This document shows, in pieces, positions 1-57,660 of a DNA stretch of 64,000 nucleotides; positions within the stretch are counted from its first letter, which is position 1, and each line of letters begins with the position of its first letter. The notes under the pieces were generated by a model, which worked only from the letters and a program-made list of their open reading frames with translations, had not been told where the DNA came from and did no database searches. The translations under genes were made by a program, and so were the position numbers. Source of the stretch: Basidiobolus meristosporus CBS 931.73 (Eukaryota > Fungi > Basidiobolomycota); NCBI GenBank assembly GCA_002104905.1, contig MCFE01000463.1, positions 1 through 64,000 of the forward strand, given 5' to 3'.

Positions 1-461
1 CACACAAGCAAATGTGTAGGTGCGTAACAGATCCAATAGCTGCAATTGTATTACAGATGACATATATATATGCAGGGTGTTTATTTATAGGGGTTTTGTC
101 TCAAATGTGAGACAACCTTGATATTACTTATATCAAAAATTTGATGATCACTGATTTGCAATGGCTCAATTTGGATTGCAAAAAAATGGGTTGTTGGGAT
201 CATTACAAATGTGTGCAATTCAAAGCAATTGCATCATCTTCTCCTGGGTTTTTTTCTCACAGGGATTACTACTGAAGCGTTTGGTAGTGACTCACTTTGC
301 ACACCTATACTACTTCCTGGCTGACTATCATCTTGGCTACTTGTGTATTTGTAGTCAGTATTTTGCCTCCTTGTTGATGAGTGCAATGCTGCAGCTTGGC
401 CATGCTGAATTGCTCCAACTGAACCAACTGAACCGGCCTGTAGTGCCATGCGCTGACGCGT

Positions 462-1538
462 TGTAGTGGGGTCACAGTGACACCCACAGGCAGATGTGCT
501 CATTCTCATACGTTCACTTCCCTAAAAAAGGATTACCCCCCTATATTAGTATCATCCCAAATTGCAATATTTTCTATTCTGTCTATGTGATTATTACTAT
601 GCAACCTGACAAACTATTTGTCACTATTAACCCATTGCACAAGCTATTCCTATTCCTTGCCAAAATGCCAAGATAAGATAGTTACCATATAAGGCAAGTA
701 CCCCCAACAGTGCCCATGTCATGTGACCATCTTGGTTTCATAATCCTCCTATCCTATTACCATAAGAGGCAACCACATGACACAGGGGTTTCATATTACC
801 ACTACCTGATTGGCTAGGTGCTACTATGTCTCATGGAACAATCCACCAAGAATTTGCGCTATTTTTAGTACGCAAAGACATGATTGGTTGTCTACTACCT
901 TCTGGAAACTTCCGGAAAGTATTTTCTAGCAAGAATTTGAGCAGCAAAAACGTATATAAGGGAGGCTATCCCTTAAAATAAATGATCCCTCTTCCAATAT
1001 TCCAACTTATTGATTAGTGAGATCACCGCTACCTATTACCACTATTTTCTGACTCAGACCTGACAACACTCCCAGGAAACTGTGCTGACAGCCAACTGAC
1101 CTTGGAGGCACTACTTGTGAGGAATACTCAGAGTAGGTATATTTTATTATATTGTTTGTTTTCCCAAGTTTATTCTTGTACAGGTAAAGATACTTTCAGT
1201 CTTTGTAACTATTGGTCAAAGCTGCATTCTTATCAAGTCCCTGTTGGTGGAGTTTACAGTTGTTTTGACTTTGGAAGCTTTAGTACATTGTCATCTCAAA
1301 GGACATTGAAGCCATTATAAACTTTTGTTAAGACACCAACTAAGTTGGGGATTGTAGTTCAATAGCTTTCCCTTGACAAGCTTGAGGCTTTATCCCTCAT
1401 CACATTAGATTAGACAAAAGACCCAGTATTCCTAGCAAGCTTTTGCCAGAGGTTATCGCACCCAGTGAACACCCCACACACATTTACACTTGAGAAGTCT
1501 TGGCCGTATTTTGCCCTTTGGACTTATGCACCACCACA
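462..1538 (+). repeat. 5' LTR (1077 bp), LTR family 1
   Basis: TGTAGTGGGG...CACCACCACA. Near-identical to 6572-7650, with roughly 25 differences by eye, many of them CpG-type. Confidence 0.97.
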
Positions 1539-1542
1539 TATT

Positions 1543-1560
1543 TGGAACCCAACGTGGGGG
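1543..1560 (+). promoter_or_regulatory. Primer-binding site, tRNA-Lys(CUU)-like
   Basis: TGGAACCCAACGTGGGGG here and TGGCACCCAACATGGGGG after the LTR ending at 57742. Both resemble the Lys1,2-type PBS TGGCGCCCAACGTGGGGC. Confidence 0.7.
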
Positions 1561-1679
1561 GTTCATACAAACTCCCTAGGACCCAACAAGATTTACCTGA
1601 AGATTTGAGCCGTTACCCATTTTATTGAAACAAGACTACAGATATAATCAAGACTATAGCACCAACCTACCTACCCAAA

Positions 1680-3637
1680 ATGAACTCTATGCCGTTACCA
1701 CTCTCACATGGAGCCCCACAGTTTGATGGAAAGAATGTGGAGAGCTTCCTATTCAGATGGGAGAAGCTCTGCAAGATGTGCAGCCTATCTGAACAAGAAA
1801 TGGCTGAAGACTTCCCCTACTACTGCACCAATGATATTACCACTAAGCTTCTCAGACAAGGAGACATTCTGACTGACTGGACCTTAATGAAGACCTACCT
1901 ACAGACCAAGTATGGTAGACCCCAGATATACTATGGAATTGAAGACCTCAGACACTTTGGATGGACAGGACTCTCCAAGCTACCACTTGAAGAGTTCATT
2001 CAACAGTATGAAGATATGGCCAAGCCACTCCTGGAGTCCCAGGCTATAACTGAGTTCACCATGACACTTTACCTTGCACAAGGGCTTCCCCAGAAATTGG
2101 CAAGCAAAGTTGACCTACATGCAGCCAAGGATGACAAGTCTGGCATTCCTTGCTTTGCAGAGATGAAATGTGTACTCCTAGAGGCAAAGCAAACTTCTAC
2201 TGTTATGAGACTCCTGACATCTAATCTGCCAGACCAGCCAACCAAGGAGCTAAAGAGTGCTGTTGCTGACAATCAGACCTACACTACCAACAGAATTGAC
2301 CAACTTGCTGAACAGCTACAAAAGCTAGCCCTCAAGATTAACGGCTCAGCTGAGGTAGCTACTGAGGGCCAAAGAGCTTTGCCTAGACACTGCATTTGGT
2401 GTGACTCTGCTCAGCATGCCAGACAAGAATGCTCAGAGCTTAGCCAGCTACTTAGAGAAGGAACAGTACAGTTTGATGCTGATGGAATTCTTGCTGATAA
2501 GGAAGGAAAAAGGATTCCCATTAATTTCCAAAGAGGTGGAATAAGAGCCCTTTTCCAGAAGTCTGACTCAGCAGCTAGAAAGATTACTGTTGATGCCCCT
2601 ATTGAGACTCATACAGTGAGTCCAAACAGCCCTGACAACAGAAAATACAAAGTAGACACCTTTGCTACTAAGAGACACCTTCCTGAAGAACCTGTCAAAC
2701 CCATCCTTAGAAGGCCACAATTTGAAGAGCCTGAGGTTATTATTGACAAGAGGCCTGGAACACTGCCCACCCAAGACCCATTACCGCACTTTCAGATGAC
2801 CTCAAAGATAGCAGGCTACTCAAGCCCCCAATTGATTACTGAGAAACTACTGAAGCAGAACCTCACTTTGTCAGTTGGAGAAATCATGAGTGTATCACCA
2901 TCTGTTAGGAAGACCTTTGATGAGCAGCTTAGAACAAGAAGACAAGCTGTTGAGCATATGGACACCCATATAATCCAGACAAACCATGAAGACCACAAAA
3001 AGGATGACAACACTACCAAATATAAGACCTTTTACTCAGTTGCAACTGCAGTGGTGAAAGGGTATATTTATGATGATCCTGTTGACTGCCATATTGACAG
3101 TGGTTCAGAGATTTGTGTTATGCTGCTAGACTTCTGGAAGACGCTTAGAAGCAAGGAGCTACTGCCTGTTGATAGAGATATTGGATGGAACATGACTGAT
3201 GCAAACTCAGGATCTAGTCCACTCTATGGTGTAGTGCACAAGTTCCTATTGAGGTACAAGGAATCAAGGTCTGGCTTCCCCTCTTTATCTGCCAGAAGGC
3301 AAACTTTGACCTTCTGTTAGGCAGATTATGGGAGACCAGTACTAAGGCTACAACTACCAACTATTCTGATGGGTCAGTGTGGTACACTATACAAGGATCC
3401 AACCCAGGACTACAGTCAACGTTCTGTGGGGTAACACCCAACAATAAGAGGACACATACCGCTTGCCAGAAGACACATCTTGTTATAGAAGATGATGAGG
3501 AGCCTGACAATATACACCCCAACAGTTGGAGCTGCTCATTAGGTATACAGGAGCAGACAGCTATGGTTTGCACAAAATACAAGACAGTAGAACAGAAGAT
3601 TAGACCATCACTTACACCTTTAACTGATGGATCTTGA
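1680..3637 (+). pseudogene. gag: Gag-protease, broken by a 1-bp deletion near 3243
   Basis: Zinc knuckle CIWCDSAQHARQEC and aspartic protease HIDSGSE. The copy at 57883 reads through this point in one frame (aagtttcc vs aagttcc). Confidence 0.9.
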
Positions 3638-6532
3638 CCTGCTGATTACATCAGACCACCAGAAGGAACACCAGAAGATATACAACTTACACCTGAGAGA
3701 CTTAAGCAACTTATCATTGGTGATGGAAACCTAACACCGGAGGAGATCCTACTATTTGAAGAAACCCTGATAAGGCATGATAAGGTTTTCTCATATAATG
3801 ACAAGGAGATGGGACTCTTAAAGACATTGGTTGAAAAACCTATCAAGATTCATACAGTGCCCCACACACCCTGGTCATTTAAGCCTTACCCACTACCTAG
3901 AGGACTCCAAGCTGATGTGCATGACCTACTTAAGAAGAAGATTGAAGCTGGTATCCTAGAACCTTGCCATGGACCTTATGCTAACAGATGGTTTGTGACC
4001 AAAAAGAAGAATGGGAAGCTCCAATTCATTCAAGACATGCAACCTGCAAATGCTGTCACTATCAGAGATGCTGCAATACCTCCATCTATTGATGACTTTG
4101 CAGAAAGCTTTAGTGGTCACTCCATCTACTCAACATATGATCTCTACTCAGGATATGACCAGATCCCCCTAGATGAGACGTCAAGAGATATGTTTGCACT
4201 CCAGACGCCATTTGGACTGTTAAGAATGACAAGACTCAGCCAAGGGGCAACAAACTTGGTGGCTCAGTTCCAGAGATGCATGGTAAATGTGCTCTACCAG
4301 TTTATACCTGAGAAACTTGCTGTCTTTGTTGATGACATAGGCATCAAAGGACCAAAACTCCGGGACACAACTGAAGTTATGCCTGGAGTAAGAAAGTTTG
4401 TCTATGACCATGTTTCAGACAATGATGCCATTTTAGGAGCCATTGAAGAAGCTGGACTCACCATCAGTGGTGAGAAAAGCAGCTTTGGTGTATCAGAGAT
4501 ATCCATTGTTGGACAAAAATGCAACACCTTTGGTTGTTCACCCGGAGACTCCAAGACACAAAAAATATGCAACTGGCCTACCCCCACAAATCTAACACAA
4601 GCTTGTGGCTTTGTGGCAGCTTGTGGATTCTTTAGGATCTGGATCCCAAGATTTTCTGAGATAGCAGAACCAATCTACCAACTACAGAGAAAGAATGCCC
4701 CATTTAACTGGGGAGAAGAGCAAGAAGAAGCCATGCAATTACTAAAAGAGGCCTTAGTATCTCCACCAGTTCTGAGACCTCTTGACTATCAGAACACCAA
4801 ATGCCCACCTATCTTGACAGTGGATGCAAGCCCTATAGGAGCTGGAGCACTACTTGGCCAAGAAGATGAAGATGGCAACCGCTATGCCTGCAGATATGAG
4901 AGCTGCCCCTTCTCTCCTAGAGAACAAAGATACTCACAGATTAAGAGAGAGCTACTAGGAGTTGTGAAGATGCTGAGAAAGCTGAAGTCACAACTCTACA
5001 TGACACATTTCATCCTGGAGACAGATGCTAAGCCACTTATAGGAATGATCAACAAGTATGATCTACCTGATGATGCCACAAATTGGTGGATGGCATGGCT
5101 GAAAATGTTTGACTTTGAGGTCAGACATATCCCTGGCAAGAAAAATGTTATGGCCAATGCACTCTCCAGGAAGGGACCACAGTTGTCTGAAGATATGGAC
5201 CCTGACTTTGATGACATAATTGATGCAGTAATCCAACAACTACATGTGAAGAAGCCCAGCTACTCTACATGGAACACCATTCAAGACTATCTGAGAGCCT
5301 TAGAGAAGCCACCAGGAATGAGCCCACATGATTTCAGAAAGCTCAGGAAGAAGGCCCATCATTTCTACATAAAAAATGGCCTCCACTTCAAATGAGTAAA
5401 GCCTGGACAGACACCAAGGAGAGTTATAGTTGAGCCCCAGGAACAACTGACTATTATGTCAAGCCTTCATGAAGGAAGACCTGGTGGTCATAGAGGCAGA
5501 GATGCCACTTACAATGTTGTTTCCAGTAGATACTACTGGGAGCATATGTATCATGATGTCCCACACTTTGTTGAATCTTGTGACATTTGCCAAAGAAGGT
5601 CAACCAAGAGATATGAGGAGCTGCTCCATTCAACCTACACACCTTGTCTATGGCAAAAGGTTGGCATTGACCTGGTCCACATGCCAACTGCTGGAACCAA
5701 GAAGTACCTTGTTGTTGCCAGAGATGATCTGAGTGGGTGGGTAGAAGCTTGAGCCCTATCCAATAACAAAAGCCACACCATATGGAGATTTATTCTTGAG
5801 GATATAATATGCAGATTTGGCTGCATCAGCCAGTTTGTTGCTGACCAAGGAGAAATGACTTCAAATTTGATCCAGGAACTCTGGTCACAATACAAGATTC
5901 ATATTGCTTTCACCACCGCTTATCACCCACAGGCCAATGGAATGGTTGAAAGAGGCCATGGCCCGTTGGTTAACTCCCTAGTCAAGAGCTGCAACAACAT
6001 GACACTACAGTGGCCTACACAACTTCATCTAGCACTCTGGGCGGATATAATCACTACAAAACGCAGCACAGGTCTATCTCCATTCAAATTGCTTTATGGA
6101 CATGATTGTGTTCTTCCCATAGAGCTTGACTCAACATCCTGGAACATGCTAGAGTGGAGAACTACAATGAGTACAGAAGAACTACTGACTACACGCATCA
6201 AACAGCTTGATCACCATGAACTTGATATTACCTAAGCAGCTGCTAAACTCAAAGAGACAAGACTTCAGAACAAGGAACCATTTGACAAGTCACATAGCCT
6301 TAGACCAAAACCATTACTGCAAGGAGATCCAGTACTGCTCTATGATTCCACTTTAGACAAGCAGTGGAGTTGCAAATTCAACAATAAATGGTCTGGCCCA
6401 TTTATTATCTCTAAGGTGATTGGAAATGGAAGCTACTACTTGTCTGAGCTTGATGAAACACCGCTAAGAACACCTGTGGCAGGAAACAGACTTAAGCTAT
6501 TCAAGCACCGGAATTTTGCACATCACATTTAG
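3638..6532 (+). pseudogene. pol: Pol: RT (FVDD), RNase H, integrase (zinc finger, DDE core, GPY/F module, no chromodomain); several in-frame stops
   Basis: Track ORFs 3809..5395, 5456..5752 and 5855..6235 are all in one frame, separated by TGA/TAA stops. Motifs include HEGRPGGH...CDICQ, DLVHMP and YHPQANGMVER. Confidence 0.95.
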
Positions 6533-6571
6533 TTTGCTTTGACCTGAGTTCAAAGCTGAGAGGGGGGTAGA

Positions 6572-7650
6572 TGTAGTGGGGTCACAGTGACACCCACAGG
6601 CAGATGAGCTCATTCTCATACGTTCACTTCCCTAAAAAAGGATTACCCCCCCTATATTAGTATCATCCCAAATTGCAATATTTTCTATTCTGTCTATGTG
6701 ATTATTACTATGCAACCTGACAAACTATTTGTCACTATTAACCCATTGCACAAGCTATTCCTATTCCTTGCTGAGATGCCAAGATAAGAAAGTTACCATA
6801 TAAGGCAAGTACCCCCAACAGTGCCCATGTCATGTGACCATCTTGATTTCATAACCCTCCTATCCTACTACCATAAGAGGCAACCACATGACACAGGGGT
6901 TTCATATTACCACTACCTGATTGGCTAGGTGCTACTATGTCTCATGGAACAATCTGCCAAGAATTTGCGCTATTTTTAGTACGCAAAGACATGATTGGTT
7001 GTCTACTACCTTCTGGAAACTTCCGGAAAGTATTTTCTAGCAAGAATTTGAGCAGCAAAAAAGTATATAAGGGAGGCTATCCCTTAAAATAAATGATCCC
7101 TCTTCCAATATTCCAACTTATTGATTAGTGAGATCACCGCTACCTATTACCACTATTTTCTGACTCAGACCTGACAACACTCCCAGGAAACCACGCTGAC
7201 AGCCAACTGACCTTGGAGGCACTACTTGTGAGGAATACTCAGAGTAGGTATATTTTATTATATTGTTTGTTTTCCCAAGTTTGTTCTTGTACAGGTAAAG
7301 ATACTTTTCAGTCTTTGTAACTATTGGTCAAAGCTGCATTCTTATCAAGTCCCTGTTGGTGGAGTTTACAGTTGTTTTGACTTTGGAAGCTTTAGTACAT
7401 TGTCATCTCAAAGGATGTTGAAGCCATTATAAACTTTTGTTAAGACGCCAACTAAGTTGGGGATTGTAGTTCAATAGTTTTCCCTTGACAAGCTTGAGGC
7501 TTTATCCCCCATCACATTAGATTAGACAAAAGACCCAGTATTCCTAGCAAGCTTTTGCCAGAGGTTATTGCACCCAGTGAACACCCCACACACATTTACA
7601 CTTGAGAAGTGTTGGCCATATTTTGCCCTTTGGACTTATACACCACCACA
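6572..7650 (+). repeat. 3' LTR (1079 bp), LTR family 1
   Basis: Direct repeat of 462-1538, preceded by a PPT. Confidence 0.97.
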
Positions 7651-8916
7651 GCATTCTTTTACTTGCCAAGGGCTCCAGTGGTTGAGGCACTTCATGTTGG
7701 TCATCATCAGTCAGTTCACCAGAAGTAACTCACTGATGGTCAGGCAAAACGGCATGCGCAGGCGCGCCTTGACACGTTGAGATGGCCCTTGGCTGAGTTC
7801 AATGTGATGCTGCATGTTGATGCAACTCAGTCCGCTCCAATAGACTTGTGTCTAAATGAGCAGTTTGGCAAGTTCTTGTAGTTTTGCTCTGAAGCACGCG
7901 CGTTGACTCAATGCGGGGCATTCTGGCAAAGGGTGTTGGCGTGGTCTGGACTGACGTGCGCTGGCACGCTTTAGTTGCAAGAGATGGTAGGGAATCTAGC
8001 AAGGCGTGCTGGCACAATCTGGACAATGTTGCTTGCGGTCTGTATTCTTCCTCCTGAAGCTCACCATCTGATTCCTCAAGGTATTCACTTACCCTCTGTC
8101 TGATACTTTGGAGCTGTTGCCTGGATGCATCCTGTGTATATTGCTCTTGGAAGCCACTTAGCTCTACTAATATATCACATAGTACATTAGTCATTTGAGG
8201 CAAAAACACATTCAAAATCTCTTTGGTTCCAAAAGTTGAAGCACAAACGGGCGTGTCTGGCCCGTACTGTGCAAATTGCGCGCAAAATTGTTCCCGCACG
8301 GCTTCTTTGTCGAATCCCCTCACTCTCAGCTCATTCTTGATTTCAATACTTGTCTTGTTATATATCTTCTTACATACATTAGCTGGCATCTTGATGTAGA
8401 ACTCATGCCACAGCTTTCTACTCAAATTCTTCCATCTTTGTCAACTCTCTGAGGTATCTAGTTCTGCTAGATTAATCAGTAGTGCCCAAATATCTGTATG
8501 AAGGCTCATTATAGACATTTAGGCCACACTAAAATCATTTGGTAAGAACTTGAACGGATCCAACATTGACTTTTCCGGACTGGCAGTATATTGGCATCAA
8601 CCTGGTCTTATATAAAATATATACAAAAACTAGTGTGATTGTTGAATTTTCCATATATTATGATTGATGCATCTTGGATTGCGTTGACACGGATTGGATC
8701 ACATCAATTGCAGATTTCCTATTTGATTATAGACCTATGATTAAAGCATCAAGAAAAGTACCAAGGCATTGTTTGCGGATGAATTTTGCAACATAGTGAT
8801 GGGATACATGGCAATCAATGGCGATTTAACCATAATGTATTAAAAATCAGATAAATAACTCAGATTGTGCTGAATTGAGTCAAACCGCCTCCATACAATC
8901 ATCCACCAATTTTATT

Positions 8917-11019: not shown

Positions 11020-11956
11020 TGTCATGATCACATGACAACCATGAACACCCATGCCAAGTTTCAGCTTCCTAGCTCTATTTCTAAGAGATACCTTCTGGAA
11101 CCTTCTACCACCTTCCAGAAAGCTCCTGACCATTCCAAACCATTGTTACACAACAAAACATTCCATGGAAGCTTCCCATTGTATTTTCATAGTCCAGCAC
11201 CATATATGGAAATACCAGGTCACATGACTTAGTCACATGATCAGCCATTGGGCCTCACCATTGCCCCTGCTGTGTTTCAACACCTCATGAGTGAAATATT
11301 CTGTGAGCACCTTGACCAGTATGTGGTAATCTACCTTGATGATATTCTCATATACTCCCAAAGCCAAGATAAACATGATGAACATGTCAAGAAAGTATTG
11401 AGAAAACTAGACTCTGCCGGTCTCTATGCCAAGCTAGAGAAGTGTAAATTTGACTAGAGAGAAGTGGAATTTCTTGGTTACCTCATCAGCCCTGAGGGAA
11501 CAAGAATGGACCCAAAGAAAGTTGACTCAGTCCAATCCTGGAAAACTCCAAGTTCAGTCAAGGAAGTACAATCCTTCCTGGGATTTGCCAACTTCTATTG
11601 CAGGTTCATAGCCAACTACTCCAAGATAGTCACCCCTCTGACAAAGCTTATCCAGAAGAACACACCTTTTGCCTGGAATGAGGAGCAATCCACCTCATTC
11701 AATCAACTCAAAAAATCTTTCCTGAAGGCCCCTTGTTTGCCCACCCTGACCTTGAGAAGCAACTCATAGTGGAGACTGATGCTTCTGATTTTGCCCTTGG
11801 TGCTATACTCTCCCAGTATTATGAAGACAATGTGTTGCACCCCATTGCATTCTACACTTGGAAGTTTTCCCCTGCGGAGAACAACTATGATATATATGAT
11901 AAGGAGTTGCTTGCCATCATTGTAGCCTTTGAGCAATGGAGACACTACCTGGATGG

Positions 11957-12759
11957 TGTGGTGGTGTAGAGGTACTCCTGGGAGAAGCTACACAACTCAA
12001 GGTGTGTGAGGTGTTTGATGGGTGCAATAACCTCTGTGTCTAGACTGCCGGTGTCTTTGTCAATATGTCACTATGGTAAAAGCTCCTGCTTCTCTAGCTT
12101 CCTAGGTGCTCCAAGTGTCTCCAAAGGCCTCTGTGTGTCTTGTGCACAGCCCTGAAAAGCTCCTTGATGGCAGGTCTGAGATGTACTGTTGAAGGCAGGT
12201 GCAGTGATCTACTGCTAATCAATAAGGTAGAAGTGTTACTGATAGAAGGGATGATTAATTGATGAGGGATTGCTTTCCCTCAAATACTTTTCCTGATTGC
12301 CAAGTGATTACTAATGACAAGGTTCTAGAAAATTCTAGGCATCAGTGGAATTCTTGATGACATCACTATGAGCTAAAAATAAGGCAAGAATGTCCTGGAA
12401 GGTTCTAAAGGGTACAGCACATCCAACCAATCAGGAATCAGTAGTCTGAAACCTGTGCAACATAGAAATACCATACATGGTATTGAAATGGTAGGGATGG
12501 TAAAACAAACCTAGGTCATGTGTCATAGGTACTGACACAGGTACTTGCCTTATGTAGGTACATTTAATAATCACAAAGCTGAATAACATCTGGATAATTA
12601 ATGCTAATAACTAATCAAGGTCAACATCATATGGGGATAATACTGATAATATGGGCAAAAGAAGAATGGGATAATACTGATAAGATAAAATACGGATAAG
12701 TATATCATAATGACTATATGAATAAACTTGTCTGTGGGAGGTATGTTTACCCTACCACA
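11957..12759 (-). repeat. Solo LTR, family 2 (803 bp)
   Basis: TG...CA termini; homologous to 61832-62635. Flanks are ATGG and GTGG, and removal restores the host frame HYLDGAKH. Confidence 0.92.
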
Positions 12760-13585
12760 GTGGTGCAAAACACAAAATCAAAGTCTTCTGTGACCATAAG
12801 AACCTCAAGTACTTTGCAACTTCCAAAGTACTAAACCAGAGACAAGCCAGATGGTCACTCTTCCTGTCCAACTTTGACTTTACTATCACCTGTAGACCTG
12901 GTGCAAAGCAAGGAAAGCCTGATGCCCTGTCCAGAAAAAAGGAATATGCCCTGGAAGAGGGAGGTGAAGCCTGTTGGCAAATGGAACACCCATTGCTGAG
13001 CAAGAAATATTTTGAGATTCTTGCCACCTAGTCCTCAAGTCTTGTCATCCCTTCATTCCTAGTAAGGATATCAGAATCCCAGGCCTCTGATATGACTTCC
13101 AACACCGTCAAGAAATATCTGGAATCCCCAGTTTGGCCCCCTCTCAAGTTCCCAAACACCCAGAACCTGCATTTGGTAAACAACCTCATTTACCACAAGC
13201 AGCAGCTTCATGTCCTAGACCTTGCCACCCAGCTAGATATCATTAAGTCTTGGCATGATTCAATGGCTGCAGGCCACTTTGGTACTGCCAAAACCTTGAA
13301 TGCTATCAAAAGAGATTTCTGGTGGCCTAGAATGACAACTCTTATCAAAGAATACATTCTGACTTGTGATATTTGCAACCGTGCAAAACCAGCCAGACAC
13401 CAGCCCTATGGACATCTTCAGCCCTTGCATATCCCAGAACACCAATCACGATCTATCTCTATGGACTTCATTACTGACCTCCCTGAGTCCTGTGGCTTCA
13501 ATGCTCTACTTCTAGTAGCTGACTGGCTGACCAAGATGGCTCACTTTATCCCTTGCTGTAAGCACACTGATGCAAAAGAAACCGC

Positions 13586-14656
13586 TGTGGTGGTGTATAG
13601 GTCCAAGGGAGAGATACATCCAACACTTCTCAAGTGTTTTGTGTGTGGGGTGTTCACTGGGTGCAATAACCTCTGGCAAAAGCTTGCTAGGAACACTTGG
13701 GTTCTGTCTCTAATCTAATGTGAAGGGGAATAAAGCCACAAGCTTGTAAAGGGAAAACTATTGAGCTATAATCCCCAACTTAGTTGGTGTCTTAACAAAA
13801 GTATGTGCTGGGTTCAGCATCCTTTGAGATGACAATGTACTAAAGCTTCCAAAGTCAAAACAACTGTAAACTCCACCAACAGGGACTTGATAAGAATGCA
13901 GCTGTGGTCAATAGTTACAAAGACAGAAAAGTATCTTTGCCTGTACAAGAACAAACTTGGGAAAGAATCAAATATAATAAAAGATACCTACTCTGAGTAT
14001 TCCTCCCAAGTAGTGCCTCCAAGGTCAGTTGGCTGTCAGCGCGGTTTCCTGGGAGTGTCCTGTGGACTAGGGTTGGAGGTTCACATAGCAGCAGGTAGCA
14101 GTGATCACACTAATCAACAAGTTGGTATATTGATAAAAGGGATGATGATTTATTGTTGAGGGATAGCCTCCCTGATATACTTTTCTTACTGGCTAAGTGA
14201 TTACTAATCATGGTGTTCCAGAAGGTTCCAGATATCAATAGAAATCTCAATGACATCAGAATGACCTAAGAATGTTCTAAGTAGGTGCCGGAAGGTTCTC
14301 AGAGGCACAGCACATCCAACCAATCAGGAATCAGAATTCTGAAACCTGTGTAACATGAGGATACCATATATGATATGGAAAGGGTAGAGATGGTGACATG
14401 GGTTGATCATGTATCACGGGTACTGGCACGGATACTTGCCTAATATAGAAGTACTTATAGCTAGTAATCTTACATAAAGTGAGTGGTAACTTATGCAATA
14501 AGGTAAGCAGGTGTGATAGTCAACTGGCTTATGGGATAGTACTGATTGGGTAAGACAAATGGGATAAAACTAAAATCAGTGTAGTAGAGATATAGGGAAG
14601 TAGAAAATAAGGCAATGAGCACATCTGTCAGTGGGTGTCACTGTCACCCCACTACA
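13586..14656 (-). repeat. Solo LTR, family 1b (1071 bp)
   Basis: Perfect CCGC/CCGC TSD. Removal restores the integrase frame [16 protein letters not shown]. Confidence 0.95.
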
Positions 14657-15404
14657 CCGCTGCATTAGTCCTCAAAAATATTTTCCACCTTCATGGTATC
14701 CCCAGTGATATTGTGTCAGATAGAGGCCCACAGTTTGTGTCCAAGTCTTAGAAACACTTCATGCAATACCTTGGTGTTCAAGTCAAGCTCTCTGCTGCCT
14801 TCCATCCTCAATCTGATGGCCAGACTGAAAGTATTACCAGATTCTAGAGCAATACCTTTGGTGCTATATCAATTACCAGCAAGACAATTGGGTTGATCTA
14901 CTCCCTGTTGCCAAGTTTGCCTACAACAACTCAAGCCATGGTGCAACCGGTTTTACACCATTCTATGCAAACTATGGATTCCACCTTCACTCTGATATCC
15001 AGATTCCAACAAACACAATGAGCTCACATGCAGCTGAACATGCCCAAGCAATCCAGGACATCCGGAATACCCTCAAGGAAGAGCTATCCTTAGCTCAGGA
15101 AAGCTACAAGAAATTTGCCAATCTAAAACAGCATCCCAGCCCTGATCTTAATGAAGGAGATTCTGTATGGTTGCTCAGAAGAAACATCAGCACCAACCAC
15201 CCTTGTGACAAATTGGATTTCAAGAAACTTGTTCCCTTCAAGATCAAGAAGAAGCTTAGCCCTATAGTATATCAGCTATAGTTACCAGCAAGTATGAAAA
15301 TCCATGATACTTTCCATATGTCCTTCCTGGAGCCATATTGCAGGAACACCTTGCCAAACTGGCAAGAAGCAAAGCCCCAAGCCATCCAGGTTGACCAACA
15401 TCAA

Positions 15405-25856: not shown

Positions 25857-26093
25857 TTGAATTTCCTTTTTGCAGCAAAGATACTGCTTTCTCTACCTGA
25901 GATTTTGACTGCTTCAAAAATATTATCCGCTCATTTTGTTTCTGGACTATTTCCTGATTTCTCTGGGCCATTGCTTCAGTCCTATCAGCCACTGAACCTA
26001 ATTGCCTCACTAATGCCTTGTTATGAGCTGACAACACACAAGACTTATTCAGTTGGATAGTGCAACATAATGCCAGCCTGTTTTTGGTGCTGG

Positions 26094-26745
26094 AGTGGTG
26101 GTGTATAGGTCCAATGGAGAGATATGTCCAACACTTTTCAAGCATTTTCTGTGTCAGGTGCTCACTGGGTGCAATAACCTCTGGCAAATGCTTGCTAGGA
26201 ATACTTGGGTTCTGTCTCTAATCTGATGTGACAAGGAGTAAAGAAACAAGCTTGTCAAGGGAAAACTATTGAGCTACAATCCTCAACTTGGTTGGTGTTT
26301 TGACAAAAGTATGTGCTGGTTTCAGCTTCCTTTGAGATGACAATGCACCAAAGCTTCCCAAGTCAAACAACTGCAAACTCCACCAGCAGGGACTTGATAA
26401 GAAAGCAGCTGTGGTCAATAGTTACCAAGTGAGAAAAGTATCTTTGCCTGTTTCCTGAGAGTGTCCTGTGGTCTGGCGCTGGAAGTTCAGGTAGCAGCAG
26501 GTAGCAGTGATCACGCTAATAAACAAGTTGGTATATTGATGAAAGGGATGGTGATTTATTGCTGAGGGATGGCCTCCCTTACATAATTTTCTCACTGGCT
26601 AAGTGATTAATAATCATGGTGTTCCAGAAGGTTCCAGAGATCAATCAAAATCTCAATGACATCAGAATAAGCTAAGAGTATTCTAAGTAGGTGTTGAATG
26701 GTTCTAAGGGGCTGGGCACAACCAACCAATAAGGAATCAGTACTC
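26094..26745 (-). repeat. Truncated, diverged family 1 LTR
   Basis: (A)GTGGTGGTGTATAGG start, homologous to the LTR at 13586; outer flank is CTGG. Confidence 0.8.
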
Positions 26746-28260
26746 AAAAAAAAGAGATTTGAATGAGATTTTTGTCTCAAATTACTAATGTACTATGTGA
26801 TATATTAGTAGAGCTAAGTAGCTTCCAAGAGCAAAATACACCAGACTCATCCAGGCAGCAGTTCCAAAGTATCAGATAGTGGATAAGTGATTACCTTAAG
26901 GACTCAGAAGGTTAGCTTCAAGAGGAAGAATACATACCACAAGTAACAGTGTCAAGATTGCAGCAGTATGCCTTGCTAGATTCCTTACCATACCTTGCAA
27001 CTTCAGTGCACCAGCACATGTCAGTCTAAACTACACCAACACCCTTCACAAGAATGCCCCGCATCAGGTCAACATATGTTTGGTCAATGCTTGCACTTCA
27101 GAGCAAAACCACCAGAACTTGCCAAACTGCTCATTTAGACACAAGCCCATTGGAGCAGGCCAAGCTGTATCAACAAGTGGCATCACATCAAACTCAGCCA
27201 AGGGACATACCAGTGCATCAAGTCATGCTTTCACATGCCATTACACCTGACTATTAGCAAGTTACTTTGGGTGAACTGACTGATGATGACCCACATGAAG
27301 TGCCTCCACCATCAGAGCCTCTGGCAAGTAAAAGAACACATCAATGTGTAGCACTGCAGGCTGGTTGAGTAGCCTCATCCAGTGCAATTTGGCGCAGCCA
27401 AGCTGCAGCATGAGCTCATTAACTAGGAGGCAAAACACTGACTATAAATACGCAAGTAGCCTAGAGGTTAGTCAACAAGCAAGTAGTTTAGGTGTGCAAA
27501 GCAAATCCCTACCAGATGCTTCAGTAGTAATCCCCTTGGGAAAAAAACCTTTGAGAAGATGATGCGCTTGCATTGAATTGCTATTATTTGTCATAAATCA
27601 AATGACTCATTGTTGTTGTGATCCAAATTGAACCATTGCAAATTGCTGATCATTAAATTTTTGATATAAGTAAAATCAAGATTTTCTCACATTTGAGACA
27701 GAACCCCCATAAACAAGCACCCTGCATATATGTAATTATCTGTAACAATAGTGCAGCTATTTGAGCTGATTTGCGCCTAGAAAATTGGTTGTGTGCTTGC
27801 TTAATGGGCAAAATGGGATATATGATGGCAAACCAGGTAGCTTGTGTATGGTCAGAGTACCTATTGAGGGCTGACAGCCTCAGGATACTTTTGGACTAAT
27901 TAACCACCAAGATACCATCAAATAGGAGTGATGGTAGCCTTGATGGTAAGTATCAGAGTAGTTTTTAGTGTCGTATGCATTTATTTCCAGTTACATAAAG
28001 AAACATATCCAAATACTAGATATTACCTACCATAATAGTAGTATCCAATTGCGCACATAATGCAATCATTACAAGTAGACACAATCATTTGAGCCAACCT
28101 CACCATGTCAGATTGTGCCATAGTGTGCAAGATTGTGCCACATGGTGCAAAATTGCTCAAGAGCAATCCTAACTACTGCTAGCTATAATTTGGAGCCAGA
28201 TTGTTCTTAGAGACCACTGATTGTGCTGCACACCCTGGCACAGTACAATGGAATCAGTCT
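26746..28260 (-). mobile_element. Harbinger-like element copy 2 (inverted, truncated); includes the terminal TIR
   Basis: Reverse complement of positions 1-461 and 7651-8230 without the Ty3 insertion. It ends GGAATCAGTCT at 28260, followed by ACT. Confidence 0.85.
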
Positions 28261-33237: not shown

Positions 33238-33249
33238 GGTTATGAGCCC
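33238..33249 (+). promoter_or_regulatory. PBS complementary to the anticodon stem-loop of initiator tRNA-Met (half-tRNA priming)
   Basis: GGTTATGAGCCC directly after the LTR, the Ty5/Drosophila copia type of PBS. Confidence 0.85.
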
Positions 33250-48378: not shown

Positions 48379-49860
48379 AATACCATGTAAGAGTATGAAT
48401 GCTGCTTTTATATTCAGTTAATCACAATGCAAAGACCATGCAATCTGCTTGTTCTCCCAATCACTTTCATATCCCCAAGATTCTTACAACAGACTATGAG
48501 CCCCAGGCTGTCTCTCTCTGCAATGTTTACAGCTGCTATCACTGGGATTTTCCCTCTGCTGAAAAATTGGATGGATCCAACAACCAGTTGAGGAAGGTGA
48601 AGATGAAGATGCTGCTGCAAGAAAGAGACCATTGGGATATTGTCATGAGAGAAGAATGACCTCCTAAAATGTGGGAGTGGAAGCCTTAAGGTACCAGAAG
48701 AAAGAGCAAAGTGCCTTTAACTGCATTTGCCTTAATGTTAAAGGCAAATTGCTAATTCAATGCTCAAGAGCAAAGATGGCAAAGAATACCTGGAAGGCAT
48801 TAGAAGACACCTACCAGTCATACTCAGCTGATAAGAAAAGTTATCTTAGACAGAAGTTCCTTACTGCAAGTTGCTGCTAGCAGAGGAAATGAAAAATCTG
48901 ATTCTTAGATTTCCCTGCTGGTGGATGAGAGCAAATATGTGGGCATACCACCACTAATGAGGATGTGATGTTACCATCCTGAATAGCCTGACCAAGGGGT
49001 CTTAGGGATTTGTATCAGCCCTATAGTCCATAACTGAAGATTTGACCTTTAACTATGTATGTATAAGGCTCATGGATGAAGAATCAAGAAAATCAAGCAC
49101 CAACTAGAAAGAAGCCAAAAGTGCTTTAATAAGCAAAAATAGCAAACAAAGAAGGTATCCAAGACTCTGTGAAGGCAGAAGCAAACTGCTTTGCAACCAC
49201 TGTAAAAGGAAAGGACACACAGCAGACCAGTGCACTAAAAAGAAAGATGTTCAGCAGAAAAAGCCTGAATATAGAAATGCCGCAACAGCTGAAGACACAC
49301 TGTTCATATCTGCACTAAATTTCACCACAAACAAGAATTCTCAGACATGGCATATTGACTCTGAAGCATCTCAACACTTTGCACACCAAAAAGACCTCTT
49401 GGCCAGTATTAAAAAATTCCAATTAAGAACGTTCTCATGGGTGGCAATAGAACACTTCATACAGTGGGAGTAAGAACTAACCAAGTAAGTGTTATAAGCA
49501 GCAAAGGAAGTCACACACTTACATTCAAAAAAGCACCCTATGTACCAGAAATAGCACAGAACCTACTATCTGCAAGCAATGCCATAGCAGAAGGACTCAG
49601 TTTCAGCTTTGACAAATCTGGGTGCAGCATAACCAATCAAACTGGTGCACATGTTGCATTAGGTATCAAAGATCAGAATCTATCCAAGTTGACATATATT
49701 TTATCATACCTGGCAGCCAATATACAAAACTTGAATGAAGAAACACCAATGCTTTGGCACAGGAGATTTGGACACATCAATTTTGGTTATTTGTGCAAAT
49801 GATCAGAGATTGGCTTATTTCCAGAGTAATGGCTAATCCCCAATTTAATCTGGAGAGCGG

Positions 49861-50930
49861 TGTGGTGGTGTATAAGTCCAAGGGAGAGATACGTCCAACA
49901 CTTCTCAAGTGTTTTGTGTGTGGGGTGTTCACTGGGTGCAATAACCTCTGGCAAAAGCTTGCTAGGAATACTTGGGTTCTGTCTCTAATCTAATGTGAAG
50001 GGGAATAAAGCCACAAGCTTGTCAAGGGAAAACTATTGAGCTACAATCCCCAACTTGGTTGGCGTCTTAACAAAAGTATGTGCTGGGTTCAGCGTCCTTT
50101 GAGATGACAATGTACTAAAGCTTCCAAAGTCAAAACAACTGTAAACTCCACCAGCAGGGACTTGATAAGAATGCAGCTGTGGTCAATAGTTACAAAGACA
50201 GAAAAGTATCTTTGCCTGTACAAGAACAAACTTGGGAAAGAAACAAATATGATAAAAGATACTTACTCTGAGTATTCCTCACAAGTAGTGCCTCCAAGGT
50301 CAGTTGGCTGTCAGCGCGGTTTCCTGGGAGTGTCCTGTGGTCTAGGGTTGGAAGTTCAGGTAGCAGCAGGTAGCAGTGATCACACTAATCAACAAGTTGG
50401 TATATTGATAAAAGGGATGATGATTTATTGTTGAGGGATAGCCTCCCTTATATACTTTTCTTACTGGCTAAGTGATTACTAATCATGGTGTTCCAGAAGG
50501 TTCCAGATATCAATATAAATCTCAATGACATCAGAATGATTTAAGAATGTTCTAAGTAGGTGCCAGAAGGTTCTCAGAGGCACAGCACATCCAACCAATC
50601 AGGAATCAGTATTCTGAAACCTGTGTAACATGGGGATACCATATATGGTATGGAAATGGTAGGGATGGTGACACGGGTTGATCATGTGTCACGGGTACTG
50701 GCGCGGGTACTTGCCTAATATAGAAGTACTTATAGCTAGTAATCTTACATAAAGTGAGGGGTAACTTATGCAATAAGGTAAGCAGGTGTGATAGTCATCT
50801 GGCTTATGGGATAGTACTGATTGGGTAAGACAAATGGGATAAAACTATATAAGTGTAGTAGAGATATAGGGAAGTAGAAAATAAGGGAATGAGCACATCT
50901 GTCAGTGGGTGTCACTGTCACCCCACTACA
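49861..50930 (-). repeat. Solo LTR, family 1b (1070 bp)
   Basis: Perfect GCGG/GCGG TSD; very similar to 13586-14656. Confidence 0.96.
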
Positions 50931-51290
50931 GCGGTGAAGCCTGCATATATGGGAAACACACCATAGATCTGTGTAGACCTATGTAAAATCCATTCTTAGG
51001 TGGTAAGAAGTATTTGATCCCTTTTGTTGATGCTTATACAAGATAATCATGGGACTATTTTGTAGAAAGGGAGGAAGAAGCTCTGTCTAAGCTCAGGGAG
51101 TTTAATACTATGGGGGAGAGAGAAACTGGTGAAAAAATAAAAAAAATATGCTCTGACAATGGTGGATAATATACCTTAAAACTACCTCAAAACTCTTAAT
51201 CCTTTTATACAAGATTCATGCAATAAAGCAAGAGACTACTCTACTATACTCCCCACAGCAAAATGAAGTATCAGAGCATGCAAATAGATG

Positions 51291-55239: not shown

Positions 55240-55935
55240 TCACTGCTTCTCACACATCCTGGTTCTCAGCCAGCACTGCAAGGTCCAGCCCCTTATCTGC
55301 CAGTCTTTGCAATAAATCCTTGCAATATTCCAGTGTGTTCTCTTGAGCACTGCTCTTGAAGAAGTGCTGCAACCTTTTTGTGTGCTTATTAATGTTCCAA
55401 AACTCCACTGAAGGCATTGTGATAGTCATTCAAGTTCTTGACATTGTAGCCTTGTCTGTCAGTGGGATCTCCACTCTGTCAACAATGGAGGATATGGAGG
55501 GTGTAGTAGACAAACTGCCTTTTTCAGCAAACTCATCTACCTTGATAGCATGTAGCTGAGCTGCCTGTGCTTCCAACTATTGTGAAAACAGCTGCTTGCT
55601 TGTTGGTAATTCTTCTTGGCTATGATGGGATTCAGTCTGTTCTGGGCTTGCAGTGTTAATTGGCAAGAACTGCAGTTTTTTTTGCATGCCTTCCTGTCTC
55701 AGACTTGGGTAGATGTTTTTCCCTTTACCTTTTCCTTTATCACCACCAGGTCTTTCACTGCTACTTTGTCTGAGTGCTTCTTGTATAGAACTATGCTTTC
55801 TCCTGGATAAATTCTGCTCTGACGCATATGATTTGGCCTGCTTGCCCATTGCTGGCACTCTTCTGGCAACCAGACATTTCTTTTCCGCTTGTTTTGAGCT
55901 CTCAACCATAGTTTCATGGGCTTCTCTAAAAGCGG
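55240..55935 (-). pseudogene. Fragment homologous to the plus-strand second-ORF region at ~39300-40150
   Basis: Shared QEAL.QSSSE.PG.DKG and EYCKDLLQRLADK segments. A further fragment lies at 25857-26093. Confidence 0.6.
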
Positions 55936-56926
55936 TGTAGTGGGGTGACAGTGACACCCACTGACAGATGTGCTCATTCCCTTATTTTCTACTTCCCTAT
56001 ATATCTACTACACTTATATAGTTTTATCCCATTTGTCTTACCCAATCAGTACTATCCCATAAGCCAGTTGACTATCACACCTGCTTACCTTATTGCATAA
56101 GTTACCCCTCACTTTATGTAAGATTACTAGCTATAAGTACTTCTATATTAGGCAAGTACCTGTGCCAGCACCCGTGACACATGATCAACCCGTGTCACCA
56201 TCCCTACCATTTCCATACCATATATGGTATCCCCATGTTACACAGGTTTCAGAATACTGATTCCTGATTGGTTGGATGTGCTGTGCCTCTTAGAACCTTC
56301 CGGCACCTACTTAGAACATTCTTAAGTCATTCTGATGTCATTAAGATTTCTATTGATATCCGGAACCTTCTGGAGCACCATGATTAGTAATCACTTAGCC
56401 AGTGAGAAAAGTATATAAGGGAGGCTATCCCTCTACAATAAATTGTCATCCCTTTTATCAATATACCAACTTGTTGATTAGTGTGATCACTGCTACCTGC
56501 TGCTACCTGAACTTCCAACCCCAGACCACAGGACACTCCCAGGAAACTGCGCTAACAGCCAACTGACTTTGGAGGCACTACTTGTGAGGAATACTCAGAG
56601 TAGGTATCTTTTATCATATTTGTTTCTTTCCCAAGTTTGTTCTTGTAAAGGCAAAGATACTTTTCTGTCTTTGTAACTATTGACCACAGCTGCATTCTTA
56701 TCAAGTCCCTGCTGGTGGAGTTTACAGTTGTTTTGACTTTGGAAGCTTTAGTACATTGTCATCTCAAAGGATGCTGAACCCAGCACATACTTTTTTTAAG
56801 ACGCCAACCATGTTGGGGATTGTAGCTCAATAGTTTTCCCTTGACAAGCTTGTGGCTTTATTCCCCTTCACATTAGATTAGAGACAGAACCCAAGTATTC
56901 CTAGCAAGCTATTGCCAGAGGTTATT

Positions 56927-57660
56927 AGACTTGTTCCGTTGGATAGTGCCACATTGAGCCATGAGTGCCATATAGTGCCACAGTGTGCCTGAGAGTTATA
57001 GCAGACCTAAACTTGGCCACAGAGTGTGGCATAGAGCTCTTCATATTCATGCAAAGCAGCTCCTGTGTTTCACCTACTGTGCAGGAGAAAATCAATTTTT
57101 TAACCTTTTTTTTGGGATCAAAATTGTGCATGACATAAAAGAGCACAGACAGACTGAAGATATGCATCTGGTACACAATACCCATGGCACTCTAAATCTA
57201 GCCCCACAGGCTTGTAGCATGTCACAAAAATGCATGGCACTATCTTGGTCCACTGGTACTGTCTGGCACTATAAGTGCTTTGTATAGGTTCTACTTTAGG
57301 GCTAATATTTAAATATAGTGCCAGATAGTACCAGTGGACCAAGATAGTGCCACGCATTTTTGTGACATGCTACAAGCCTGTGGGGCTAGATTTAGAGTGC
57401 CATGGGTATTGTGTACCAGATGCATATCTTCAGTCTGTCTGTGCTCTTTTATGTCATGCACAATTTTGATCCCAAGAAAAAGGTTAAAAAATTGATTTTC
57501 TCCTGCACAGTAGGTGAAACACAGGAGCTGCTTTGCATAAATATGCAGAACTATATGTCACACTCTGTGGCCAAGTTTAGGTCTGCTATGACTCTCAGGC
57601 ACACTATGGCACTATTTGGCACTCATGGCTCAATGTGGCACTATCCAACGGAACAAGTCT
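56927..57660. mobile_element. Foldback MITE copy 4 (734 bp), inside the LTR
   Basis: ATT/ATG flanks; the uninterrupted LTR reads GGTT-ATT-GCACCC. Confidence 0.93.

What the first reader, a model, noticed from the sequence alone, without database searches (positions are those of the whole stretch)
458..7654. Ylt1-like Ty3/gypsy group appears to integrate at CG-centred 4-bp targets in a CpG-depleted region
Seen: all seven readable junctions of LTR families 1 and 2 fit N-C-G-N or its deamination product. The paired TSDs are GCGT/GCAT (458 and 7651), CCGC/CCGC (13582 and 14657), GCGG/GCGG (49857 and 50931) and ATGG/GTGG (11953 and 12760). The single flanks are GCGG (55932), CCGC (61828) and CTGG (26090); four of the seven are CCGC/GCGG. 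The 4-bp length is supported by host reading frames restored on removal (KRTRQRM, KETAALV, HYLDGAKH) and by the paralogous empty site near 27337-27340. CG is visibly scarce across the window, so this is unlikely by chance, although n is small. Known: Yarrowia Ylt1 makes 4-bp TSDs, and Drosophila ZAM and tirant prefer CG-rich 4-bp sites; I know of no described CpG specificity for fungal Ylt1-like elements. Inference: the integrase has no chromodomain and may read CpG, or methyl-CpG, directly. That would steer it into young TEs, and CpG decay would erode its own target supply.
Basis: partly seen in the sequence, partly recalled or inferred. Interest (0 to 1): 0.85.

Follow-up and report, generated by a model that had tools for sequence, protein, structure and literature searches.

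The report
Fungal gypsy elements that insert at CpG
A group of jumping genes in this CpG-starved fungal genome, and distant relatives in other organisms, insert almost only where a CG sits in the middle of their 4-base target; this looks like a built-in preference of their integrase, not a reading of DNA methylation.

Summary
All seven junction sets are at the stated coordinates. Five have a central CG (GCGG/CCGC four times, GCGT/GCAT once) in a window whose CpG observed/expected ratio is 0.11. The chance of this is 4e-11 at the observed CG frequency and 3e-6 if CpG were undepleted. The 4-bp length is supported by restored host reading frames, a paralogous empty site, and public contigs that skip exactly LTR plus 4 bp.

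New evidence:
- Consensus flanks of 24-55 other genomic copies per LTR tip read GCGG, ACGG or GCGC. A second run of the same sample reads GTGG and ACAG.
- Six insertions of distant relatives (RT about 41% identical, other organisms) are also CG-centred.
- A sister clade uses TA-centred 4-bp sites.
- One Smittium relative is an exception (GAAA).

The integrase has the standard three domains, with no chromodomain or methyl-CpG-binding domain. The best reading is integrase-intrinsic, sequence-specific target choice, as in the Drosophila ZAM/Tirant/gypsy groups. The central base step differs from ZAM/Tirant and the host is a fungus. Methyl-CpG reading is unsupported, and "Ylt1-like" was not tested directly. 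The scan noted the same pattern on four other pieces of this genome. CpG here decays about 100 times faster than other sites, so targets and TSDs erode quickly.

The parts
458..461 (+). TSD copy 1 of element A (GCGT); the preceding base is C, so the filled site reads ACGCGT
462..1538 (+). 5' LTR of element A (1077 bp, TGTAGTGGGG...CACCACCACA)
   Evidence: 97.6% identical to 6572-7650
1539..6571 (+). Internal region of element A. PBS-like stretch from 1539. gag ORF 1680-3320 (DUF4100). PR 3218-3634. RT-RNase H 3638-5392. IN 5396-6529 (H2C2 plus rve). PPT ends at 6571. In-frame stops at 3635, 5393, 5750 and 6233, so this copy is dead.
6572..7650 (+). 3' LTR of element A
7651..7654 (+). TSD copy 2 of element A (GCAT, CpG decayed to CpA)
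27337..27340 (-). Paralogous empty site (about 80% identical flanks). It reads GTGT on the minus strand, inside ATGTGT, where the filled site has GCGT inside ACGCGT.
11953..12763 (-). Solo LTR of the related family 3 (11957-12759) with flanks ATGG / GTGG on + (CCAC / CCAT in element orientation). It sits inside the RNase H of an unrelated gypsy element.
   Evidence: contigs skip 807 = 803+4
13582..14660 (-). Solo LTR of family 2 (13586-14656) with TSD CCGC/CCGC on + (GCGG in element orientation). It sits inside the integrase of the same host gypsy element.
   Evidence: contigs skip 1075 = 1071+4
26090..26745 (-). Truncated family-2 LTR. Its 3' tip ends in T instead of A, and the flank is CTGG on +. 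The junction is doubtful.
49857..50934 (-). Solo LTR of family 2 (49861-50930) with TSD GCGG/GCGG on + (CCGC in element orientation). It sits inside a copia-like element.
55932..61831 (+). Element B. 5' flank GCGG (55932-55935). 5' LTR 55936-57742, interrupted at 56926-57660 by a 735-bp foldback element. Internal region about 90% identical to A, cut off in the integrase at 61831.
61828..64000 (-). Family-3 element lying on the minus strand. 3' flank CCGC on + (GCGG in element orientation). 3' LTR 61832-62635. PPT, then PR (62983-62711) and gag (63997-62978) directly beside the LTR, with no RT or IN between. This is a probable non-autonomous relative.

Best explanation
These are non-chromoviral Ty3/gypsy LTR retrotransposons. 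Their order is gag with DUF4100, protease, RT, RNase H and a three-domain integrase.

Their integrase joins the two LTR ends across a 4-bp stagger centred on a CpG. The consensus target is V-C-G-B, most often GCGG/CCGC. Outside the four bases there is only a weak A at -1.

The preference belongs to the integrase-DNA complex itself and is inherited:
- It is shared by three LTR families in this window, one of them a gag-PR-only relative that presumably borrows the integrase.
- It is shared by a second clade of relatives in other organisms.
- A sister clade instead chooses TA-centred 4-bp sites.

Both CG and TA are flexible pyrimidine-purine steps. 4-bp-stagger intasomes need such a step at the centre to bend the target. 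On top of that requirement, each clade reads specific bases.

After insertion the TSD CpGs decay to TG/CA at this genome's very high CpG mutation rate. This explains GCGT/GCAT and probably the two CA-centred junctions.

Shown: the sites, the statistics, the 4-bp length, the spread across clades and the domain content. Inferred: that the integrase, and not a host tether or methylation, does the reading.
For: **In the window.**
- Five of seven events are CG-centred at CpG observed/expected 0.11.
- The TSD is 4 bp by restored frames, an empty paralog and contigs that skip the LTR plus 4 bp.

**Across the genome.** Flank consensus of other copies, by LTR tip:

| LTR tip | Run X1 | Run X2 |
|---|---|---|
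| 14656 | GCGG, 55 contigs | GTGG, 45 contigs |
| 13586 | ACGG, 43 contigs | ACAG, 53 contigs |
| 11957 (family 3) | GCGC, 24 contigs | - |

Beyond four letters agreement falls to 0.36-0.41, so there is no longer motif. A joint LTR-GCGG-LTR also occurs.

**In other organisms (RT 40-43% identical).**
- L001 CCGC/CCGC
- L004 ACGG/ACGG, with 100% identical LTRs
- L003 3' flank CCGT
- L005 ACGG/GCAT
- L092 3' flank GCGG
- L022 5' flank CCGT

The product of the local CG frequencies is 1.3e-10.

**Sister clade.** Its TSDs are ATAC, CTAG and CTAT. The tree gives three clades with SH-aLRT 96-99. CG-centred sites are 11 of 14 in clades 1 and 2 against 0 of 3 in clade 3 (Fisher p = 0.03).

**Control in the window.** Another LTR family has a 5-bp TSD, GAGAC.

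**Domains.** The integrase has H2C2, rve and a weak SH3-like C-terminal domain only.

**Half-sites.** C at the inner position in 16 of 19 and T in the other 3. There is no T at the outer TSD position. Retroviruses that make 4-bp TSDs likewise disfavour T at that position (PMC4422553).

**Precedent.** Errantivirus subgroups use TATA, CGCG or ATAT (PMC5408687).
Against: - The number of fully resolved sites is small: 7 here and 6 plus 1 in relatives.
- The genome-wide support is a consensus of contig ends, not a tally. Contigs whose flank begins like the reference flank are sorted into other rows, so the outer letters are biased.
- One relative in the same clade as the Basidiobolus elements does not fit. 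Smittium L007 has the TSD GAAA/GAAA if its LTR ends are read as TGTC...GATA.
- L005 has discordant flanks.
- Nothing here separates integrase-intrinsic reading from a host factor that binds CpG.
- No biochemical data exist.
- The relation of the two CG-using clades to each other is unresolved, so one origin or two cannot be told apart.
Confidence: 0.78

Rival explanations
1. Methylation-dependent targeting. The integrase, or a partner, recognises 5-methyl-CpG. Insertions then go to methylated DNA, meaning TEs, and the target supply is eroded by 5mC deamination.
For: The genome is extremely CpG-depleted, and CpGs in the LTRs decay about 100 times faster than other sites. This fits heavy CpG methylation of repeats. 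All seven insertions lie in other repeats. Retrotransposons that read methyl-CpG exist: arthropod Copia elements carrying an MBD (PMC6673714).
Against: There is no MBD, SRA, CXXC or other reader domain in gag, pol or the integrase tail of these elements or their intact relatives. CG-centred sites are also used by relatives on contigs with little CpG depletion: L022 at observed/expected 0.91 and L092 at 0.63. The window is nearly all repeats, so 'insertions in TEs' is uninformative. No methylation data were available.
Confidence: 0.08
2. There is no base-specific reading. The intasome needs only a flexible pyrimidine-purine step at the centre, and insertions were made into CpG-rich, then-young DNA, so CG is over-represented by context.
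For: CG, TG, CA and TA are all pyrimidine-purine steps. A central step of this kind is the strongest shared feature of 4-bp-stagger retroviral integration (PMC4422553). The sister clade uses TA.
Against: CG makes up only 1.9% of pyrimidine-purine steps in the window, which gives p = 5e-8 for 5 of 7. Even undepleted DNA would give CG at about 4% of positions (p = 2.6e-6). Clades 1 and 2 never show TA and clade 3 never shows CG. The outer TSD positions are also biased.
Confidence: 0.05
3. A host tethering factor that binds CpG-containing DNA, for example a CXXC-type or other sequence-specific protein, places the intasome. The integrase itself is not selective.
For: Most well-studied fungal LTR elements are targeted by tethering: Ty1, Ty3, Ty5 and Tf1 (reviewed in PMC5408687).
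Against: Tethers position insertions within tens of bases. They do not fix a dinucleotide exactly at the dyad of the 4-bp stagger. The precision, and its conservation across hosts as different as this fungus and the unknown organisms of three other samples, points to the active site region.
Confidence: 0.06
4. Artefact. The four bases belong to the LTR, or the copies are segmental duplicates of one insertion.
For: GCGG/CCGC recurs four times.
Against: The TSDs differ between copies (GCGG, CCGC, GCGT). The flanks beyond them are unrelated. Empty sites exist. Host reading frames close only when one 4-bp copy is removed.
Confidence: 0.01

Closest known systems
Drosophila errantiviruses of the ZAM/Tirant subgroup (and the gypsy and Idefix subgroups)
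   Same: These are Ty3/gypsy integrases without a chromodomain that make 4-bp TSDs at short, GC- or AT-rich, near-palindromic targets. Specificity differs between related subgroups: TATA, CGCG or ATAT (PMC5408687). Here the CG-centred and TA-centred clades parallel that.
   Different: The host is a fungus (and unknown microbial eukaryotes), not an insect. There is no env ORF. The central step is CG (V-C-G-B), whereas in CGCG the centre is GC. No insect protein was among the best 120 homologues. The cited review states that sequence-specific integration is exclusive to errantiviruses and their two-ORF derivatives.
Ylt1-like lineage of fungal Ty3/gypsy elements (Ylt1, Tca3)
   Same: A fungal host, no chromodomain and a 4-bp TSD. 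The 4-bp TSD of Ylt1 is from my own knowledge. The lineage definition is from PMC2864245.
   Different: Grouping with Ylt1 itself was not tested. In the papers searched I found no reported sequence preference for Ylt1-like elements.
Prototype foamy virus and gammaretroviral integration (4-bp TSD)
   Same: A sharp target bend with a strongly preferred pyrimidine-purine step at the centre, and T disfavoured at the first TSD position (PMC4422553; my half-site table). The integrase core aligns to PFV integrase at E = 3e-12.
   Different: Retroviral preferences are weak and statistical. Here the central step is almost invariably CG.
Arthropod CopiaMBD retrotransposons
   Same: Retrotransposons whose insertions are linked to CpG-dense, methylated DNA (PMC6673714).
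   Different: Those carry a captured methyl-CpG-binding domain and show a regional bias. Here there is no such domain and the CG sits exactly at the insertion dyad.

Membership tests
Ty3/gypsy (Metaviridae) LTR retrotransposon | LTRs with TG...CA tips, a PBS and PPT, and pol in the order PR-RT-RNase H-IN | tested here: met
Chromovirus | Chromodomain at the C-terminus of the integrase | tested here: not met
   There is no PF00385 in the integrase tail of element A or of intact relatives. None of the 120 homologues lists it.
Ylt1-like lineage | Fungal, non-chromoviral gypsy element with a 4-bp TSD | tested here: met
   The organism identity comes only from earlier scan notes and from Smittium as the nearest named relative.
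Ylt1-like lineage | RT/IN groups with Ylt1 and Tca3 in a phylogeny | not tested
   No Ylt1 or Tca3 sequence could be obtained by reference. The length window of the protein search excludes long polyproteins.
Errantivirus (ZAM/Tirant group) | A third ORF (env) between the integrase and the 3' LTR | tested here: not met
   The integrase frame ends at 6529 and the 3' LTR starts at 6572, so there is no room for an ORF.
Errantivirus (ZAM/Tirant group) | 4-bp TSD at a palindromic CGCG target | tested here: not met
   The TSD is 4 bp, but the targets are GCGG/CCGC, GCGT, ACGG and CCGT. The centre is CG, not GC.
MBD-carrying retrotransposons | Methyl-CpG-binding domain encoded in the element | tested here: not met
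   Pfam scans of all ORF pieces at E up to 1 found none.

The most novel reading that the evidence does not exclude
Integration depends on the methylation state of the central CpG, read by the standard integrase without any dedicated reader domain. The element would then home to methylated repeats. By attracting the genome's roughly 100-fold CpG hypermutation to its own targets, it would consume its target supply. That would make a self-limiting transposon-host feedback loop.
Probability: 0.08. Interest if true: 0.85.

Novelty: new variant of a known kind. Interest (0 to 1): 0.55.

Why it matters
**Outside insects.** Sequence-specific integration by LTR-element integrases has been treated as a peculiarity of insect errantiviruses (PMC5408687). 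Here the same kind of behaviour appears in fungal gypsy elements. Related clades choose CG-centred or TA-centred 4-bp sites. This gives a natural pair of integrases for mapping which residues read the target.

**A candidate residue.** The CG-using clades carry D-[R/Q]-G-E-[L/M] after the second catalytic Asp. The TA clade has D-G-G-x-E-[F/N]. The Glu aligns with PFV Ala188, a known target-DNA contact.

**A testable evolutionary prediction.** In a genome whose CpGs mutate about 100 times faster than other sites, a CpG-requiring element can land only in young or protected DNA. That predicts nesting in young repeats and insertion into CpG-normal genes.

**A practical point for annotation.** TSD-based LTR annotation in this genome must allow CG/TG/CA mismatches between the two TSD copies.

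Tried and rejected
- **Close copies by protein search.** The best hit to RT-RNase H was only 46% identical, so no further Basidiobolus copies could be fetched that way. The search sees only proteins of 322-1024 aa, so intact long polyproteins may have been missed.
- **Metagenome scan with a clade profile.** It gave 80 loci. Nearly all contigs collapse at the LTRs. Only L022 gave a usable flank. L015 and L024 were ambiguous and were excluded.
- **L002.** There is no clean TSD (5' atta, 3' gtat), so it is counted only as ambiguous.
- **L009 and L010.** They have no flanks.
- **Smittium L007.** The alignment boundaries gave no TSD. Reading the LTR as TGTC...GATA gives GAAA/GAAA, which I report as an exception.
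- **An extended motif.** A T-rich run follows the TSD in four sites. However, the 30-letter flank consensus has only 0.36-0.41 agreement, and the half-site table shows only a mild A at -1. I do not claim it.
Not adopted. In PFV that residue contacts the base three positions upstream of the joining point (PMC4422553), and I see no preference at that position.
- **TSD bases coming from unprocessed LTR ends.** Rejected. The bases next to the PPT and PBS (GA, TA, AA) do not match GCGG.
- **Literature.** I found no fungal CpG-centred target in the papers searched. The library is partial, so this is not proof of absence.
Full report
**What is in the window.** The window is a repeat-dense region with 41% GC and extreme CpG depletion. 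It holds 293 CG in 64 kb (observed/expected 0.109), with TG and CA in excess at 1.33-1.40. Earlier scan notes name the genome as Basidiobolus meristosporus. I did not verify this. The nearest named relatives of the element's RT are from Smittium, another zoopagomycete.

**Element A (462-7650).**
- The LTRs are 1077 and 1079 bp and 97.6% identical, with tips TGTAGTGGGG...CACCACCACA.
- A PBS-like stretch follows the 5' LTR, and a PPT (GAGAGGGGGGTAGA) precedes the 3' LTR.
- The coding order is gag with DUF4100, protease, RT, RNase H, then an integrase with an H2C2 finger and rve core.
- Pol carries in-frame stops at 3635, 5393, 5750 and 6233, so this copy is dead.
- No chromodomain or other extra domain is detectable.

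**The seven insertions.** A motif search finds no further tips of these families in the window. In element orientation the flanks are as follows.

| Insertion | Coordinates | 5' / 3' flank |
|---|---|---|
| Element A | 462-7650 | GCGT / GCAT |
| Solo LTR | 13586-14656 | GCGG / GCGG |
| Solo LTR | 49861-50930 | CCGC / CCGC |
| Element B | from 55936 | GCGG / - |
| Family-3 element (3' LTR 61832-62635) | 61832-64000 | - / GCGG |
| Family-3 solo LTR | 11957-12759 | CCAC / CCAT |
| Truncated LTR | 26094-26745 | - / CCAG (tip ends in T, doubtful) |

The PPT sits to the right of 62635. Next to that LTR come protease and gag with no RT or IN between. This copy is a gag-PR-only derivative. Its LTR tips nearly match those of families 1 and 2.

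**TSD length.** Three independent lines give 4 bp.
- Removing the LTR plus one 4-bp copy restores open frames containing KRTRQRM, KETAALV and HYLDGAKH. The last two lie in the integrase and RNase H of an unrelated host gypsy element.
- The paralog of element A's flanks (about 80% identical) aligns across the joined flanks with exactly a 4-bp gap. It reads ATGTGT where the filled site has ACGCGT.
- Public contigs of the probable source sample skip exactly 807 and 1075 bases at the two solo LTRs. That is LTR plus 4 bp in each case.

**Is it more than chance?** Five of seven events are CG-centred.

| Background model | Probability of at least 5 of 7 |
|---|---|
| Observed CG frequency in the window | 4e-11 |
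| CpG not depleted | 2.6e-6 |
| Only a pyrimidine-purine step required | 5e-8 |

The two CA-centred junctions add nothing by themselves. A different LTR family in the same window (32869-37554) has a 5-bp TSD, GAGAC. The pattern therefore belongs to this group and is not general to the region.

**Genome-wide hint.** I laid Logan contigs of four public runs on 11400-15400. Dozens of contigs leave the LTRs exactly at their tips. The consensus of their flanks on the + strand is as follows.

| LTR tip | Run X1 | Run X2 (same sample) |
|---|---|---|
| After 14656 | GCGG (55 contigs) | GTGG (45 contigs) |
| Before 13586 | ACGG (43 contigs) | ACAG (53 contigs) |
| Before 11957 (family 3) | GCGC (24 contigs) | - |

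- Agreement over the 30 letters is only 0.36-0.41, so nothing beyond about four bases is shared.
- This is a consensus, not a count. Flanks that begin like the reference flank are filed under other positions, so the outer letters are biased.
- A consensus CG next to the tips is still hard to get by chance where CG is 0.5% of dinucleotides.
- The CG/TG/CA mixture is what decay predicts.
- A joint LTR-GCGG-LTR also occurs. It is as if one element had landed in the TSD of another.

**Relatives elsewhere.** The RT-RNase H piece has no close relative in the protein collection. The best hit is 46% identical. I fetched the DNA around distant hits and scanned metagenome contigs with a clade profile. 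A quick maximum-likelihood RT tree gives three supported clades whose mutual order is unresolved.

| Clade | Members | SH-aLRT |
|---|---|---|
| 1 | Basidiobolus A and B plus Smittium | 96 |
| 2 | P0001, P0002, P0008 and a family from sample ERZ25073694 | 99 |
| 3 | Twelve proteins, including one from Penicillium | 99 |

The TSDs found in clades 2 and 3 are as follows.

| Clade | Locus | 5' / 3' flank |
|---|---|---|
| 2 | L001 | CCGC / CCGC |
| 2 | L004 (LTRs 100% identical) | ACGG / ACGG |
| 2 | L003 | - / CCGT |
| 2 | L005 | ACGG / GCAT (discordant) |
| 2 | L092 | - / GCGG |
| 2 | L022 | CCGT / - |
| 3 | L006 | ATAC / ATAC |
| 3 | L008 | CTAG / CTAG |
| 3 | L011 | CTAT / CTAT |
| 3 | L002 | ambiguous, 3' flank GTAT |

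- Local CG frequencies at the clade 2 loci are 1.4-5.5%. Their product is 1.3e-10.
- These loci share no DNA similarity with the window, so they come from other organisms.
- The exception is the Smittium copy in clade 1. It reads GAAA/GAAA if its LTR is taken as TGTC...GATA.
- Overall, CG-centred sites are 11 of 14 in clades 1 and 2 against 0 of 3 in clade 3 (Fisher p = 0.03). Counting L002 as a fourth clade 3 site gives p = 0.011.

**Mechanism.**
- Retroviruses that make 4-bp TSDs bend the target sharply and strongly prefer a flexible pyrimidine-purine step at the centre. They also disfavour T at the first TSD position (PMC4422553).
- My half-site table of 19 half-sites has C at the inner position 16 times and T 3 times. 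The outer position never has T. There is only a mild A at -1.
- CG and TA are both pyrimidine-purine steps. The general requirement is therefore met in both classes, and each clade adds base-specific reading.
- The integrases of intact CG-class relatives have only H2C2, rve and a weak SH3-like C-terminal domain.
- After the second catalytic Asp, the CG-using clades read D-[R/Q]-G-E-[L/M]. These include element A, the ERZ25073694 family, L092 and over 35 metagenome loci. In the Smittium copy the Glu codon is a stop.
- The TA clade reads D-[G/K/A]-G-x-E-[F/N], with identical spacing.
- HMMER aligns the Glu with PFV Ala188, a known target-DNA contact. In PFV that residue touches the base three positions upstream of the joint.
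- The gag-PR-only family 3 uses the same sites. This fits trans-use of the same integrase, which is an inference.

**Methylation.**
- No evidence supports methyl-CpG reading. No reader domain exists.
- CG-centred sites occur on contigs with nearly normal CpG content (L022 at 0.91).
- Repeat CpGs in this genome are nevertheless extraordinarily mutable. The two LTRs of element A differ at 12 non-CpG positions.
  - At four ancestral CpGs one LTR has TG and the other CA.
  - At four more, one copy has decayed.
  - Only five are intact in both.
- That is roughly 100-150 times the rate at other sites.
- The stop at 5393 is TGA in A and CAA in B, as expected from an ancestral CGA.
- Targets and TSDs therefore erode fast.

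**Comparison with known systems.**
- The nearest known behaviour is that of the Drosophila errantivirus subgroups, with targets TATA, CGCG and ATAT (PMC5408687). That review calls such specificity exclusive to errantiviruses.
- The present elements are fungal, lack env, and centre on CG rather than GC.
- Fungal gypsy elements fall mainly into chromoviruses and Ylt1-like elements, plus a small related lineage called SN_1006 (PMC2864245). By exclusion this group is probably on the Ylt1-like side, but I could not test that.
- I found no report of a CpG-centred target for fungal elements.

**Earlier notes.** Four other pieces of this genome carry the same idea (s1-212430, s1-218903, s1-222322, s1-202573). 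The one follow-up reached the same verdict as mine. I could not read their sequences, so they are not counted as evidence.

**Verdict.** It is a new variant of a known kind.

Noticed in passing
window 462-1538 vs 6572-7650; 5393 vs 61597: CpG hypermutability. The two LTRs of element A show CA against TG at the same dinucleotide four times. About half of the ancestral CpGs are lost at only about 1.1% other divergence, which is roughly 100-150 times faster. An ancestral CGA became TGA in A and CAA in B. This could be 5mC deamination or a RIP-like process aimed at CpG.
   Followed up: partly
window 18385-19123, 44622-45361, 52711-53452, 56926-57660: A foldback element of about 735 bp with two near-identical inverted arms, tips (TA)GACTTGTTCC...GGAACAAGTC(TA), apparently flanked by TA. 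One copy interrupts the 5' LTR of element B.
   Followed up: partly
window 61832-64000 (minus strand): A family-3 element has gag and protease directly next to the PPT and 3' LTR, with no RT or integrase. It is a probable non-autonomous relative. PR is 52% and gag 35% identical to element A, and the LTR tips nearly match.
   Followed up: partly
window 32869-33237 and 37186-37554; solo copy 30884-31251: A different LTR element (LTRs 99.7% identical, TGTTG...CAACA) with a 5-bp TSD, GAGAC. I used it as a control.
   Followed up: partly
window 3635-3637 and 59839-59841: Elements A and B share an in-frame TGA between protease and RT (DGS*PADYIRPP). It is either inherited damage or a programmed read-through stop.
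   Followed up: no
joint 14656 to 13586: Public contigs join the 5' tip of the family-2 LTR to its 3' tip with exactly GCGG between them (depth about 600 in two runs). It is as if a second element had inserted into the TSD of a first.
   Followed up: no
L001 5118-5540; L003 7372-7794; L005 3340-3762 and 12043-12465: The 2.39-kb LTRs of the ERZ25073694 family each contain a 140-aa ORF with no Pfam match.
   Followed up: no
window 11251-11951, 13212-13415, 14650-14829; 44336-42564; 49700-51100: The host sequences of the nested insertions are an unrelated gypsy element (RT about 26% identical to A) and a copia-like element. Another distant gypsy pol lies at 44336-42564.
   Followed up: no
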